Shown here one piece after another: positions 234 to 57,673 of a stretch of 64,000 nucleotides of DNA. The stretch is from Podarcis liolepis (lineage: Eukaryota), in NCBI GenBank assembly GCA_965112155.1, contig OZ218098.1. One strand, given 5' to 3'. The notes under the pieces are model-generated. The model was not told the DNA's origin. It worked only from the letters and a program-made list of their open reading frames with translations, and made no database searches. The translations under genes and the position numbers were made by a program. Every line of letters begins with the position of its first letter. Position 1 is the first letter of the stretch.

Positions 234-3200
234 GTAAGGTCAGGGTTGATTCATTCTCCAGTATTTATTCCTTCATATTTAATATTTTGTGTGTGATAAG
301 TAACATAAAAGCTGTGTGTGTATGTCGCTATGACAATTCATCAATCCAACTGCACAGATGTTGCTTTTACCCAGGGCTTGTGGGATAAATACATTATTGT
401 GTACTCTTCCTTTTAATTCCATTATGGGCAATCTTACACATTACACAGAGGAAAACCTAGGTTTGCCAACAAGTGTAGATTCAACATGAATCAGTGAGTA
501 GCCAATCACTTGAAAATGTATAGAGTTGTCCTGATGTAGCCATTGACTCTACAATGCCCCCTTTTATATCACTTGTACAAAACTCAATAATGTAATACTG
601 TTTAAGTAGTTCATGATTTGCACAGGCAGGATCAAAGTTTAGACTGTCAGATCCTTGGGACGGAGACCTCTCTCAATGTTGTATGCCTTATGTTCGGCTT
701 GTAGTTACCATAGTTTTATTTACTTGTTGGCCCCAATCCAATCCATACTGGCACAGGAAAACTCTGAGAACTGTGTCTATTCAACAGCACAATGTATGCT
801 GAGGAAGGGAGATGTGGATTTCTCCTCTCCCCTGCAAATATGCAAATCTACCTTAGATATTTCCATACTAACTTAGAAATCTATAGACAAACTAATATAA
901 AAGAATAACAACCATTTCAAGTTGTATCAGCTAAAGCTCTTTCTTCTGCAGTCTGGAAGGACAGCTCTTCAAATTGGAGACAGCTTGAACACTGAGAAAG
1001 CCACTCTGATTGTGGTCCACACAGATGGCAGCATCGTAGAGACTGCAGGCTTAAAGGGGCCGTCAGCATCTCTAACATCAGGTATTATGTGGCCTTGCAA
1101 AACTTTTTAAAGTGTCACTCCTCAAGTTTAGTTTCATGCCTTGCAATGATAAGGTTATTGTGACAGTTAACTCATAACATTTGGTTTATCACCTCTTGAT
1201 GTTTTGTTGGTATATTTTCTGACTGTTCACTTTTATATCGGAAATGACAGATGAATGCACTTTGAGTTAGTTCAAGTAGCTAAGGGAAATTTCTAAACTG
1301 AGAGATGGAAGGCAAAGAGGAGTTTGCAACAGGATGACAAATATTTATTGAATTTTGGCGAAATAAGTATAATGACTTGGACCCACACTTCCTATGAGTA
1401 GATTTCCACTCATCTGATTCTCCCTTTGGGGAAAAGGGCAAGAGAGGTGATTCCTACAGATTCCTCCTTGCTCCTGCAACCATCTCTATACTTGGAAATC
1501 TTCTTTGTAGGTTGGGAAACCTTCTGGAATGTTGGGGCTGGAGAGGGTATTGGTTAAAATCACCTGCCCCTTCCTCCTCTGTTGAACTGGAATCCTTTCC
1601 AGGAACAGAAGGTTCCCTCGTGATCTATGGGAAGACATAGAATTGTAGAGTGGGAAGGGGCCACAAGGATCATCTAGTCCAGCCCCTACAATGCAGGAAT
1701 CTTTTGCCCAAAGTGGGGATCAAACCCAGGACCTGAGGTTAAGAGTCTCATGCTCTACCGACTGAGCTTTCCCACATGTCTTGTTCAACTTAGTATTAAT
1801 ATAAATGTGCATCAGTGTGTGGTGTTTACTTTTTTATTACAATGATTACAATTATAGCAACGTGAATAAATTTCATATCATGCATCCATGTCCATCACAA
1901 CTGTTTCCTTTGTCTAGTGCTGATTCCAATAAAGTGCAAAAGACGTCCAGTTTTTCTGAAATGTCTCAATAGAGTTGATTCTTTCATCCCTTAATTGTTT
2001 GTATTGTGTTATTTTATTCACTACTATTAAATCCAAATTTTTCTTCTTCAAAAACATACCCATTTCTTAGCCAGATAGCTTCCAAATCTTATCCAGCCAT
2101 CTTTTCCATTTTACATGCTTCTGCAATCATTATACAAGCTAAATCTACATGAATCACCAAGATTCGTCTGTACATGTGTTCTTCAATCTCTCTGTGTGTG
2201 CTTTTATCTATAAACATTTATACTTACAACTGTTAACTTACATACTGTATTTTGTTGTTCTTTTCTGCTGTATATGTATTAATACAAAACAATGGATAAC
2301 AATAAGTAAAATGAAATATTACTCAGAAGTTATTGTTGCGAGTACTATGTTTACAGAAACCACAGCACAGTTGGAGTTCTGTATAATGTGTTACAATCAG
2401 GCTGTTAGTCCAAGTAAATGGGATTATGTTGGCTTTGATCCAATTATTCAGGTCTAGCATGTTTTTGGTAAATGACAGTTTCAGTAAATATTGAAATAGT
2501 AGGCTTTGCAGGCTTGGGGAAGGACTTGTGCTTGCATACTGTGAGTAAAACTATAATTTTGAACATTGAAGAAAAAGTATTGACATAACTGATAAGTTCT
2601 GTCTCTTTGTTTCTGTATTTAAATCATTTTTTCTTTTGAAAACCCAGCAGGGCTATCTAAACGACTGCAGGTTGCCTTGAGTAATGACATGAAAGGAAAC
2701 AATTCAGCTTCAATATCCCATTTGTAGTTCAAAGCTGTTCTTGGCCTGCTGTCTTATTGTCTTCCAGGTGGTGGTGCAATAGCTACTTGGAACACCCAAA
2801 TGATTTTACTGTGCCCTGCCTTTTTAAAAACAAAAACTTCTCTTTCATCTGATGCAGTGTTATGAAATCAGTAAATCAGGGCCAGTTCATATGCTATGAC
2901 AACAATGTGATTGGCACTGCTGCATGCTTGCATCCCATGTTGCACTAGTAATGGCTGAACTGGGAGAACCATGTGGAAGAAACGTATTGTGTGTCTCCTC
3001 TCCATGCTGCTATGGTTGAATGGAAAGCAACAATGACCTTTGCCCCTTTCCACATGATTTCTGTATTTCAAACTGATATGCTGTTTGATATACAGAAATA
3101 TTTGATTTAATATTTGTTTCCTCTTCTTTTGTTAAAGGAACTAGTTCCCAACAAGAGTGGGGGCGGCAGGGGCTGCTCCAGTTGGACTGTCTCCTCCACA

Positions 3201-56625: not shown

Positions 56626-57673
56626 AATGTGGTAAAATGTGGACTGGACGAGGTAACTGTGAGGTGGATTTGTAGTTGGTTGACCGACCAAACCCGGAGA
56701 ATGCTCACTAATGATTCTTCATCAACCTGGAAAAACGTGACAAGTGGGGTGCCACAGGGTTCTGTCCTGGACTGTTGTTGTTCAACATCTATATAAATTA
56801 CTGTACTTGAATGAAGGAATTGATGGGGTGCTAATCAAATTTGCAGATGACGCCAACCTGGGAGGGGTAGCCAATGCTGCAGAAGACAGAATCAGGAATC
56901 AATATGACCTTAACAGATTGCAGAACTGGGCCCAAGCTAACAAAATGACTTTCAGTAGGGACAAATATTAAGGTTCTACAATTGGCAGGAAGAACCAGCT
57001 GCACAAATATAAGACGGGGACACGTGGTTTGCCAGTAGTACCAGGGGTCTTGGTGGACCACAAGCTTAACATGAATCAACAATGTGATACAGCAGCAAAA
57101 AACACTAAGCTTTTTCGAGGCTGCATCAACAGAAGTATAGTTTCCTGATCAAGGGAAGTCAAAGTACCACTCTATTCTGCCTTGGTCAGACCACATCTGG
57201 AGTACTGTGTCCAGTTCTGGGCACTACAGTTAAAGAAGGATATTGACAAGGCTGGAATGTGTGCAGAGGAGGGTGAACAAGATGATCAAGGGTCTGGGAA
57301 CCAAGCCTTATGAGGAATGGTTGAGGGAGTTGGGTATGTCTGGCCTGGATAAGAGGAGACTGAGAGGAAATATGACAGCCATCTTCAAATGTCTAAAGGA
57401 CTGTCACATGGAAGATGGAGCAAGATTGTTTATTCCTGCTCCGGAAGGCTAGGCCGCAATCCAACGGCTTAAAGTTACAAGAAAAGAAATTCTGACTAAA
57501 CATCAGGAAGAACTTTCTTGGAAGGTGTAGGACTCTTCTTCCTTGGAGGTTTTTAAGCAGAGGTTGGATAGCCATATGTCGTGGATGCTTTAGTTAAGAT
57601 TCCTGCATTGCAGGGGATTGCATGAGATGACCCTTGGGGTCCCTTCCAATTCTACAGTTCTATGATTCTATGA
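56626..57673 (+). mobile_element. CR1 LINE, 5'-truncated, degenerate RT/C-terminal ORF2 plus 3' tail
   Basis: VTSGVPQGSVL, LIKFADD, DLNRLQNWA, LECVQRR..KMIKGL, RRLRG peptides in ORFs 56611, 56744 and 57243; ends in (TTCTATGA)n. Confidence 0.93.

What the first reader, a model, noticed from the sequence alone, without database searches (positions are those of the whole stretch)
1636..57673. Modular SINE system: three different tRNA heads (Lys, Asn, Ile) on one CR1 tail, with a matching CR1 in the same window
Seen: elements at 1636-1773 (-, tRNA-Lys, anticodon CTT), 34790-34945 (+, tRNA-Asn, GTT) and 54467-54595 (-, tRNA-Ile, GAT) all end in the same about 70-nt tail (GATTCC)TGCATTGCAGGGGG..GACTAGATGA.CC...CCCTTCCAACTCTAC..TTCTATG. 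That tail is also the 3' end of the CR1 at 57598-57673, and all three join it within a few nucleotides of the same point. The Asn element keeps a GGGCA linker like the end of the Lys head. Known: SINEs borrow a LINE 3' tail for mobilisation, and a tRNA-Lys/CR1 SINE type is known from lacertids. Inference: repeated head-swapping (RT template switching onto different tRNAs) generated parallel SINE families on one tail. Three heads within 64 kb would imply this is common genome-wide.
Basis: partly seen in the sequence, partly recalled or inferred. Interest (0 to 1): 0.8.

Follow-up and report, generated by a model that had tools for sequence, protein, structure and literature searches.

The report
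Three tRNA-headed SINEs on CR1 tail
Three small jumping-gene families in this lizard genome each join a different tRNA copy (Lys, Asn, Ile) to the same ~70-letter end of the CR1 jumping gene, so they can borrow CR1's copying enzyme; birds, turtles and tuatara have the same design, so these are new examples of a known principle.

Summary
At 1636-1777(-), 34790-34948(+) and 54467-54595(-), a tRNA-Lys(CTT)-, tRNA-Asn(GTT)- and tRNA-Ile(GAT)-like head each runs into the same tail. That tail is the whole 3'UTR of the decayed CR1 LINE at about 56635-57673. Tails are 80-88% alike and heads only 55-60%.

Raw reads from two related animals show these are families, not chance joins. The Asn head with its 11-nt linker piles up about 500-700-fold over the flanks. 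The reads' majority letters restore a canonical tRNA-Asn. Other contigs carry head, linker and tail together. About 1,300 reads per run join a tRNA-Ile 3' end to the tail. The Lys family was not measured here. Four other first-reader notes on other DNA of this genome (s1-843509, s1-847087, s1-844475, s1-847846) report the same three heads.

The kind is known: TguSINE1/PittSINE in passerines (with head exchange proposed), tortoise Pol III/SINE, and Squam2/tuaCR1-SINE1. I found no paper describing Lys/Asn/Ile-CR1 SINEs in lizards and could not query Dfam, Repbase or SINEBase. Serial head swapping is plausible (linker evidence, p about 0.006 against one copy) but unproven. No target-site duplications were found. 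Verdict: real, new members of a known kind, moderate interest.

The parts
1705..1777 (-). tRNA-Lys(CTT)-derived head of SINE copy 1. It ends at the discriminator base with no CCA. The first ~7 nt are not tRNA-like, so the copy may be 5'-truncated.
   Evidence: Rfam tRNA 29.6 bits at 1712-1770, model positions 7-64, anticodon loop CTCTTAA. nhmmer finds only a self hit in the window.
1636..1704 (-). AAA linker (1702-1704) plus CR1 3'UTR tail (GATTCC at 1696-1701), ending in ATTCTATG at 1636.
   Evidence: Alignments A1/A2. It is 80-83% identical to the other tails. It is the most diverged of the four, and its hairpin is disrupted.
34790..34863 (+). tRNA-Asn(GTT)-derived head of SINE copy 2, a complete 74-nt tRNA ending at the discriminator base.
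   Evidence: Rfam tRNA 33.5 bits, model positions 1-71. ARAGORN calls Asn(GTT). Read depth is 680-960 against 0-4 in the flanks. Majority read letters at 34799, 34809, 34836, 34837, 34843 and 34856 restore a tRNA that ARAGORN calls at its default threshold.
34864..34874 (+). 11-nt linker GCTGTGGGCAG between the Asn head and the tail.
   Evidence: No variant reaches 20% of about 900 reads, so it belongs to the family consensus. It matches the 3' end of the window's Lys head at 8/10 positions and the CR1 pre-tail at 6/10.
34875..34948 (+). CR1 3'UTR tail of the Asn SINE: two hairpins followed by two decayed ATTCTRTG octamers.
   Evidence: Read depth reaches about 13,700-14,500.
54528..54595 (-). 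tRNA-Ile(GAT)-derived head of SINE copy 3. Its acceptor 3' strand and linker are lost in an internal deletion of about 18 nt.
   Evidence: Rfam tRNA 23.7 bits. ARAGORN calls Ile(GAT) at -ps80. The family junction comes from read loose ends at 34876 (1,310 and 1,319 reads).
54467..54527 (-). CR1 3'UTR tail of the Ile SINE (GATTCC missing), ending in ATTCTATG.
54370..54625 (-). Older Sauria-like SINE (tRNA-Ala-like head) that hosts the Ile SINE insertion. Host parts are about 54596-54625 and 54370-54466.
   Evidence: Alignment A3 with uninterrupted copies at 39805-39950, 58655-58790 and 35055-35200. The inserted block begins at the tRNA-Ile 5' end and ends at the octamer, and about 9 host nt are missing or replaced.
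56635..57593 (+). 5'-truncated, decayed CR1 LINE ORF2 remnant (frameshifts and stops) ending ...FKQRLDSHMSWML, with stop TAG at 57591-57593. It carries a T5 run at 57550-57554.
   Evidence: Three-frame translation. tblastn gives 40-85% aa identity to the coding sequence next to the same tail motif in 74 bird-like contigs. Pfam found nothing on the short pieces.
57594..57673 (+). CR1 3'UTR, which is the shared SINE tail: TTAA, GATTCC, hairpins and two ATTCTATG octamers.
   Evidence: The hairpin is 91.6% paired over 54 tails and is best in register.

Best explanation
These are three families of simple, non-autonomous SINE retrotransposons that depend on CR1.

Anatomy. Each unit is a complete tRNA copy (Lys-CTT, Asn-GTT or Ile-GAT/AAT), running to the discriminator base without CCA. 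A 3-11-nt linker follows. Then comes the entire ~75-nt 3'UTR of a CR1 LINE, with a small hairpin, the larger hairpin described as the CR1 reverse-transcriptase binding site, and ATTCTRTG octamer repeats.

Inferred mechanism.
- The tRNA's internal A and B boxes drive RNA polymerase III through the tail, which contains no run of four T.
- The CR1 ORF2 protein recognises the 3'UTR hairpin and octamers, as it does on its own mRNA.
- It then copies the RNA into a new site by target-primed reverse transcription.
- This usually leaves no long target duplication.

Junction position. The junction sits at the ORF2 stop codon for two reasons. A shorter tail would lose the recognition hairpins. A tail about 40 nt longer would import the T5 Pol III terminator of the ORF2 end.

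Origin (inferred, about 50:35 over independent capture). At least the Asn family arose by exchanging the head of an existing tRNA-CR1 SINE. It kept about 10 nt of the former Lys head as its linker.

Status of each step. Shown: the anatomy, and the multi-copy nature of the Asn and Ile families in at least three related animals. Inferred: Pol III transcription, CR1 dependence and the route of origin.
For: Anatomy:
- Heads, tails and their similarity.
- The tail equals the CR1 3'UTR, and the stop codon is at 57591-57593.
- The ORF2 remnant is homologous to coding sequence beside the same 22-nt tail core in 74 bird-like CR1 ends.
- The hairpin is 91.6% paired over 54 tails and falls to 28-70% when slid.
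- Asn, Ile and CR1 tails adopt the same two-hairpin fold.
- The octamer and hairpin match the published description of amniote CR1 ends (PMC5729268).

Family status (about 1.3x raw reads from two animals):
- Flank depth is 0-4, Asn head plus linker 680-960, and tail up to 13,700-14,500.
- The majority letters make a tRNA-Asn that ARAGORN calls at its default threshold.
- The linker is invariant at the 20% level.
- Contigs of 159-2,430 nt from two organisms carry head, linker and tail at other loci.
- 1,310 and 1,319 reads show ...GGTTCGATCCCCGTATGGGACA-GCTGCAT joined to the tail, which is the Ile family.
- 3,870 and 4,221 reads show the CR1 ORF2 end ...GGATGCTTTAGCTGA joined to the same point.

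Discrete insertion: the Ile unit interrupts an older SINE exactly from the tRNA 5' end to the octamer.

Origin: the Asn linker matches the Lys head's end at 8/10 positions, p about 0.006.

Precedent: PMC5729268, PMC3747384 and PMC7116210 with its supplement.
Against: - No target-site duplication of 6 nt or more flanks any of the three copies.
- The Lys family's copy number was not measured. It did not appear among the listed loose ends, and its recurrence rests on unchecked first-reader notes.
- Tail fold energies are not better than shuffles (z from -1.5 to +0.1), and covariation in the hairpin is sparse.
- There is no evidence of transcription or of recent activity. The window copies are about 10% from the majority letters, and the Asn insertion is shared with the most distant holder (X13).
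- For head exchange, the linkers differ between families (AAA, GCTGTGGGCAG, GCTGCAT).
- GCTG is also the CR1 sequence at the stop codon.
- Against a canonical tRNA-Lys recalled from memory, the linker match drops to about 6-7/10.
Confidence: 0.8

Rival explanations
1. Independent births. Each tRNA species acquired the CR1 3'UTR separately. One route is insertion of an extremely 5'-truncated CR1 just downstream of a tRNA gene. Another is the CR1 reverse transcriptase jumping from the 5' end of a 3'UTR-only RNA onto a tRNA. The junctions cluster only because function demands it: the hairpins must be kept and the T5 terminator must be excluded.
For: - The linkers differ in length and sequence.
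- The Asn and Ile linkers begin with GCTG, which is also the CR1 read consensus at TAG-CTGA-GATTCC.
- T5 at 57550-57554 limits functional tails to a window of about 50 nt.
- All heads are complete tRNAs ending at the discriminator base, as expected if whole tRNAs or tRNA genes were the partners.
- Lys-CR1 and Ile-CR1 pairings arose in turtles and finches too.
Against: - Three junctions within about 8 nt of each other is somewhat unlikely even in a 50-nt window (rough estimate about 0.06).
- The Asn linker resembles the Lys head's end more than the CR1 pre-tail (8/10 against 6/10).
Confidence: 0.35
2. One-off chimeric retrocopies. Sporadic template switches from CR1 mRNA to abundant tRNAs produced single tRNA-CR1 pseudogenes, like the U6-L1 chimeras of mammals. 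They never amplified as SINEs.
For: Each head occurs once in the window. No target-site duplications were found.
Against: - The Asn head and its fixed linker are hundreds-fold over-represented in raw reads, with a coherent consensus.
- Contigs from other loci carry the same head, linker and tail.
- About 1,300 reads per run share one Ile junction.
- Four other windows of this genome were noted with the same heads.
Confidence: 0.03
3. One generic tRNA-like SINE head that has diverged. Under this reading the three 'isotypes' are noise on a single consensus.
For: All three have generic A-box and B-box similarity. Cross-head nhmmer hits occur at E 0.3-1.
Against: - Heads are 55-60% alike, which is the level of shuffled controls, while tails are 80-88% alike.
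- The anticodons differ.
- The read majority letters move the Asn head towards a canonical tRNA-Asn, not towards the other heads.
- The Ile junction reads carry a distinct tRNA 3' end.
Confidence: 0.02

Closest known systems
TguSINE1 (tRNA-Ile head) and PittSINE (tRNA-Asp head) of passerine birds, both on a CR1 tail (Suh et al. 2017, PMC5729268)
   Same: Simple architecture of tRNA head plus CR1 3' end, with the RT-binding hairpin and the 8-nt AUUCURUG microsatellite. Two different heads sit on near-identical tails. Head exchange by template switching was proposed there. One head is also tRNA-Ile.
   Different: The host lineage differs (lizard, not bird). The tail comes from a lizard-type CR1 3'UTR (GATTCCTGCATTGCAGG... 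instead of the bird ...CCCTGCTCAC-TGCAGG...). Here there are three heads (Lys, Asn, Ile), and Asn has not been reported. I had no TguSINE1 consensus to compare, so common descent of the Ile families is untested and unlikely given the host distance.
Tortoise Pol III/SINE (tRNA-Lys head, partner PsCR1) of cryptodiran turtles (table in PMC3747384; PMC5381603)
   Same: tRNA-Lys head combined with a CR1 3' end. It is the classical first LINE/SINE partnership.
   Different: It is a turtle family, and from memory it is longer, with a tRNA-unrelated body. No sequence was at hand, so its relationship to the lizard Lys element is untested.
Squam2 of squamates / tuaCR1-SINE1a,b of tuatara (tRNA-Ala head, CR1 tail, 270-284 nt; supplement of PMC7116210; PMC10702118)
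   Same: A CR1-tailed, tRNA-headed SINE present in lepidosaurs, including lacertids. It shows that CR1 has mobilised SINEs in this lineage.
   Different: Its head is tRNA-Ala and it has a body region about twice as long. The elements here are 130-160 nt, have no body and carry Lys, Asn or Ile heads, so they are not Squam2.
Sauria SINE / Squam1 (Bov-B partner)
   Same: An abundant tRNA-headed SINE of the same genome. Copies lie in this window, and one hosts the Ile SINE.
   Different: Its tail derives from Bov-B, not CR1, and it has a long body. It is unrelated to the elements here.

Membership tests
CR1-mobilised tRNA-derived SINE (kind) | 5' head derived from a tRNA, with the internal Pol III promoter region | tested here: met
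   Rfam tRNA scores are 33.5, 29.6 and 23.7 bits. ARAGORN calls Asn(GTT) and Ile(GAT), and calls the majority-letter Asn head at its default threshold.
CR1-mobilised tRNA-derived SINE (kind) | 3' tail homologous to the 3' end of a CR1 LINE of the same genome, including the hairpin and the 8-nt ATTCTRTG repeat | tested here: met
   Tails are 80-88% identical to the 3'UTR of the CR1 remnant at 57594-57673. Thousands of reads join the same tail to a CR1 ORF2 end. The hairpin is 91.6% paired over 54 tails, and the octamers are present.
CR1-mobilised tRNA-derived SINE (kind) | Dispersed multi-copy family with a fixed head/tail junction | tested here: met
   Met for Asn (about 500-700-fold depth, invariant linker, other-locus contigs) and for Ile (about 1,300 junction reads per run). 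The Lys family was not measured; only unchecked notes s1-843509, s1-847087, s1-844475 and s1-847846 report it elsewhere.
CR1-mobilised tRNA-derived SINE (kind) | Insertion as a discrete unit (target-site duplication or a defined empty site) | tested here: inconclusive
   No duplication of 6 nt or more at any of the three copies. However, the Ile unit interrupts an older SINE precisely from the tRNA 5' end to the octamer. From my own knowledge, CR1 insertions often lack clear duplications.
CR1-mobilised tRNA-derived SINE (kind) | Pol III transcription and mobilisation by the CR1 reverse transcriptase | not testable with these tools
   This needs transcription and retrotransposition assays. Note s1-847448 reports an intact CR1 in this genome; I did not check it.
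Squam2 / tuaCR1-SINE1 | tRNA-Ala head and a unit of about 270 nt with a body | tested here: not met
   Heads have anticodons CTT, GTT and GAT. Units are 130-160 nt with the head directly followed by the tail.
Sauria SINE / Squam1 | Bov-B-derived 3' region | tested here: not met
   The tail is the CR1 3'UTR. Sauria-like copies in the window share no similarity with it.
TguSINE1 (passerine tRNA-Ile/CR1-X SINE) | Sequence identity to the TguSINE1 consensus and a CR1-X-type tail | not tested
Bird-like CR1 tails differ from the lizard tail upstream of the hairpin and in the inner stem (alignment A4).
Tortoise Pol III/SINE | Sequence identity to the turtle consensus, PsCR1-type tail | not tested
   No sequence was available. 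Only the tRNA-Lys plus CR1 combination is shared.

The most novel reading that the evidence does not exclude
This lizard lineage records a chain of SINE head replacements on one CR1-3'UTR tail. A tRNA-Lys SINE gave rise to the tRNA-Asn SINE, which keeps about 10 nt of the Lys acceptor strand as its linker. The tRNA-Ile SINE is related to the Asn SINE through the shared GCTG start of the linker. Together with Squam2 (Ala), that would make four tRNA species serving one LINE partner in one genome. It would be the richest natural series of head exchange in an amniote. It would also be a system in which the junction rules can be read directly: whole tRNA to the discriminator base, no CCA, and a tail starting at the ORF2 stop codon.
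Probability: 0.25. Interest if true: 0.55.

Novelty: new member of a known kind. Interest (0 to 1): 0.4.

Why it matters
How SINEs are born is usually inferred from a single family per genome. Here, at least three different tRNA heads sit on one short LINE tail, all joined at the LINE's stop codon. That gives replicated natural experiments on several questions:
- Which part of a CR1 RNA is sufficient for recognition by its reverse transcriptase.
- Why junctions fall where they do (the terminator constraint).
- Whether new SINEs arise by head exchange or by fresh capture.

The families are also potential presence/absence markers for lizard phylogeny. They also matter for annotation, because tRNA scans and repeat libraries for these genomes will otherwise mislabel hundreds to thousands of loci. 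None of this changes current understanding of SINE biology.

Tried and rejected
- ARAGORN at default settings finds no tRNA in the window. The heads are decayed and only Rfam or relaxed thresholds detect them.
- Searches for more tails or heads in the window (blastn, nhmmer, pattern) found only the four tails and one copy of each head.
- The metagenome scan with the 22-nt tail core returned 74 loci. All are bird-like CR1 LINE ends without tRNA heads. They were useful for the hairpin and for ORF2 homology but not for lizard copies. They contain no tRNA genes to serve as references.
- Scans of genome contigs and viral contigs with the lizard-type tail start found nothing.
- Pfam on stop-free pieces of the window's CR1 and on ORFs near bird-like tails gave no family, and no intact ORF of 250 aa or more lay next to the tails. 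The CR1 label therefore rests on the 3'-end features, RT-like motifs seen by eye and tblastn.
- The target-site duplication search was negative.
- Fold energies of the tails are not significant against shuffles.
- One literature search was wasted through a poor choice of terms. No paper on lizard tRNA-Lys/Asn/Ile-CR1 SINEs was found.
- I did not run the large protein searches, because the verdict did not depend on them.
- Chance juxtaposition, a single generic head and one-off chimeras were considered and rejected.
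Full report
**What is in the sequence**

On the minus strand at 1636-1777, the plus strand at 34790-34948 and the minus strand at 54467-54595, a tRNA-like segment runs directly into a common ~65-75-nt sequence. That sequence has the form (GATTCC)TGCATTGCAGGGGGTTGGACTAGATGAYCC...GGTCCCTTCCAACTCTAC.ATTCTATG. 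The same sequence ends a decayed LINE at 57598-57673.

- Within the 64-kb window the four tails find each other at 81-91% identity (E 1e-11 to 1e-17).
- A profile of them gives E 1e-21 to 1e-24, and the next hit is at E 0.5.
- There are no further tails, and each head occurs once.

**The heads are three different tRNAs**

- Rfam's tRNA model scores 33.5 bits at 34790-34863 (complete model) and 29.6 bits at 1712-1770 (model positions 7-64).
- It scores 23.7 bits at 54524-54595, which is below the gathering score.
- The anticodon loops read GTT (Asn), CTT (Lys) and GAT (Ile).
- ARAGORN finds nothing at default settings. At relaxed thresholds it calls tRNA-Asn(GTT) and tRNA-Ile(GAT).
- Pairwise, heads are 55-60% identical, about what shuffled sequences give, while tails are 80-88% identical.

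**The tail is exactly the CR1 3'UTR**

Translation of 55800-57700 shows a 5'-truncated, frameshifted ORF2 remnant from about 56635. It contains reverse-transcriptase-like motifs (...SGVPQGSVL......FADD...). The C-terminus ...SLEVFKQRLDSHMSWML ends at a TAG at 57591-57593. GATTCC begins at 57598, so the SINE tail is the whole 3'UTR.

- Pfam did not recognise the short stop-free pieces.
- The pieces do match, at 40-85% amino-acid identity, the coding sequence beside the same tail motif in foreign contigs.
- Those contigs came from a metagenome scan with the 22-nt tail core. It returned 74 loci from two JGI sets, all bird-like CR1 LINE 3' ends with ATTCTATG repeats and none with a tRNA head.
- On 54 distinct tails, the hairpin that Suh et al. 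describe as the CR1 RT-binding site is 91.6% paired. It is clearly best in register (28-70% when slid), with few compensatory changes.
- Asn, Ile and CR1 tails fold into the same two hairpins, but not more stably than shuffles.
- The hairpin plus the 8-nt AUUCURUG repeat are the published hallmarks of amniote CR1 ends (PMC5729268).

**Families or chance chimeras**

This was the decisive question, and reads answer it for two heads. I laid about 1.9 Gb of raw WGS reads from each of two related animals (about 1.3x coverage) on window:34600-35200 at 80% likeness or more. I also laid the contigs of two further runs.

| Region | Depth in X24 / X23 | Implied copies (lower bound) |
|---|---|---|
| Flanks | 0-4 (both runs) | - |
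| Asn head and linker | 680-960 / 740-960 | about 500-700 |
| Tail | 13,700 / 14,500 | about 10,000 |

These are lower bounds because two copies that are each about 10% from the consensus sit near the 80% cut-off.

- Where the window copy differs from the pile, the majority letters (34799 G, 34809 T, 34836 G, 34837 T, 34843 G, 34856 C) produce a sequence that ARAGORN calls tRNA-Asn(GTT) at default stringency.
- No variant reaches 20% in the 11-nt linker GCTGTGGGCAG, so it belongs to the family consensus.
- Contigs of 159-2,430 nt from organisms A and E carry head, linker and tail at other loci.
- The orthologous flank-plus-head contig is present in both organisms, so this particular insertion is old and shared.
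- The clipped read ends are informative. 3,870 and 4,221 reads continue upstream of GATTCC with ...CATCTGTCATGGATGCTTTAGCTGA, which is the CR1 ORF2 end and stop codon.
- 1,310 and 1,319 reads continue with AGGTTCGATCCCCGTATGGGACAGCTGCAT, which is a tRNA-Ile T-arm, acceptor strand and discriminator base followed by a 7-nt linker.
- The Ile family is therefore also multi-copy, on the order of a thousand copies. The window's Ile element has lost about 18 nt at its junction.
- The Lys family did not appear among the listed ends, and I could not measure it.
- Four other first-reader notes on other pieces of this genome report the same three heads. These are leads, not tests.

**Discrete insertion**

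The Ile element lies inside an older Sauria-like SINE. Aligned with uninterrupted copies at 39805, 58655 and 35055, the extra block starts at the tRNA-Ile 5' end (54595) and stops at the terminal octamer (54467). About 9 host nucleotides are missing or replaced. No copy has a target-site duplication of 6 nt or more. From my own knowledge, this is common for CR1-type insertions, so the criterion is inconclusive rather than negative.

**How it most likely works**

- Shown: the anatomy, and the amplification of the Asn and Ile families.
- Inferred from established SINE/LINE biology: Pol III initiates from the tRNA A and B boxes and reads through the tail, which has no run of four T.
- Also inferred: the CR1 ORF2 protein recognises the 3'UTR hairpin and octamers and reverse-transcribes the RNA at a nicked target.
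- A detail visible in the sequence explains the junction position. The CR1 ORF2 end contains TTTTT at 57550-57554, about 40 nt before the stop codon. A tail reaching that far would terminate Pol III, and a tail much shorter than the 3'UTR would lose the hairpins.
- All three heads end at the discriminator base without CCA. Linkers of 3 (AAA), 11 (GCTGTGGGCAG) and 7 (GCTGCAT) nt follow.

**Origin**

Suh et al. derive PittSINE (tRNA-Asp) from TguSINE1 (tRNA-Ile) by template switching, on the basis of diagnostic tail nucleotides.

In favour of head exchange here:
- The Asn linker matches the last 10 nt of the window's Lys head at 8/10 positions (empirical p about 0.006).
- It matches the CR1 sequence before the tail at only 6/10 (p about 0.25).

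Caveats:
- The Lys reference is a single diverged copy. Against the canonical tRNA-Lys as I remember it, the match is only 6-7/10.
- Both the Asn and Ile linkers start with GCTG, which is also what follows TA in the CR1 stop-codon context of the read consensus. That could mean each family captured the full 3'UTR independently.
- The terminator constraint alone makes junction clustering only mildly surprising (rough estimate 0.06).

I put head exchange at about 0.5 and independent capture at about 0.35. Only family consensuses and a tail phylogeny can decide.

**Comparison with what is known**

- A 2013 table of LINE/SINE partners lists only two CR1-partnered SINEs among birds and reptiles: TguSINE1 (tRNA-Ile, CR1-X) and the tortoise Pol III/SINE (tRNA-Lys, PsCR1).
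- The tuatara genome supplement describes tuaCR1-SINE1a/b as tRNA-Ala head plus CR1 tail, 81-83% similar to squamate Squam2.
- Squamate SINE specialists in 2021-2023 work with three families, Squam1/Sauria, Squam2 and Squam3.
- A 2024 survey of squamate CR1 does not treat SINEs.
- I found no paper describing simple Lys-, Asn- or Ile-headed CR1 SINEs in lizards.
- I could not query Dfam, Repbase or SINEBase, where automatic or curated entries may exist.
- The elements fail the Squam2 test (head, length, body) and the Sauria test (tail). They meet every testable feature of the general kind.

**Verdict**

These are bona fide CR1-dependent tRNA SINE families and are new members of a known kind. 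The principle, including head exchange, is published, so interest is moderate (0.4). It would rise if the serial head-replacement reading were proven genome-wide.

The organism's name was coded in the tools. 'Lizard' rests on other notes of this scan and on the Sauria-like SINEs in the window.

Noticed in passing
window 39822-39960, 58670-58790, 35071-35192, and 54370-54466 plus 54596-54625: There are four copies of an older SINE with a tRNA-Ala-like head (Sauria/Squam1-like). One of them hosts the Ile SINE. Read depth on the 35071-35192 copy is only 30-300-fold at 80% likeness or more, so these copies are old and diverged.
   Followed up: partly
window 57550-57554: A TTTTT run sits inside the CR1 ORF2 end (codons for ...EVFKQ...), about 40 nt before the stop codon. 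It would act as a Pol III terminator, so it limits how much CR1 sequence a functional SINE tail can carry. The bird-like CR1 ends have no such run at the corresponding place.
   Followed up: partly
loci L001-L074 (JGI sets Ga0065711 and Ga0181612): Two 'metagenome' data sets hold many long contigs (up to 79 kb) that look like bird host DNA with CR1 LINE ends. The 22-nt core TGCAGGGGGTTGGACTAGATGA is identical to the lizard SINE tail, showing very deep conservation of this part of the CR1 3'UTR. The inner hairpin stem differs by a compensated pair (bird GACCT...AGGTC, lizard GACCC...GGGTC).
   Followed up: partly
window 39960-40200: Directly after the Sauria-like SINE at 39822 lies another repeat-like stretch (...CCTAAACGGCCTCGGTCCAGTATACCTGAAGGAG...CCCATCGTTCTGCC...). 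It looks like part of a different retroelement. I did not identify it.
   Followed up: no
window 34875-34945 (tables 5 and 5c): A few reads and contigs join the end of one tail to the start of another, with 7-37 nt between them. One inserted stretch includes a CR1 ORF2-end sequence, suggesting tandem or nested CR1-tail insertions elsewhere in the genome.
   Followed up: no
window 38788-38825, 50261-50511, 52362-52815: Other first-reader notes on this window report hammerhead-ribozyme-like motifs in DRD4 introns and a 422-bp insertion with a 16-bp target duplication. I did not examine them.
   Followed up: no
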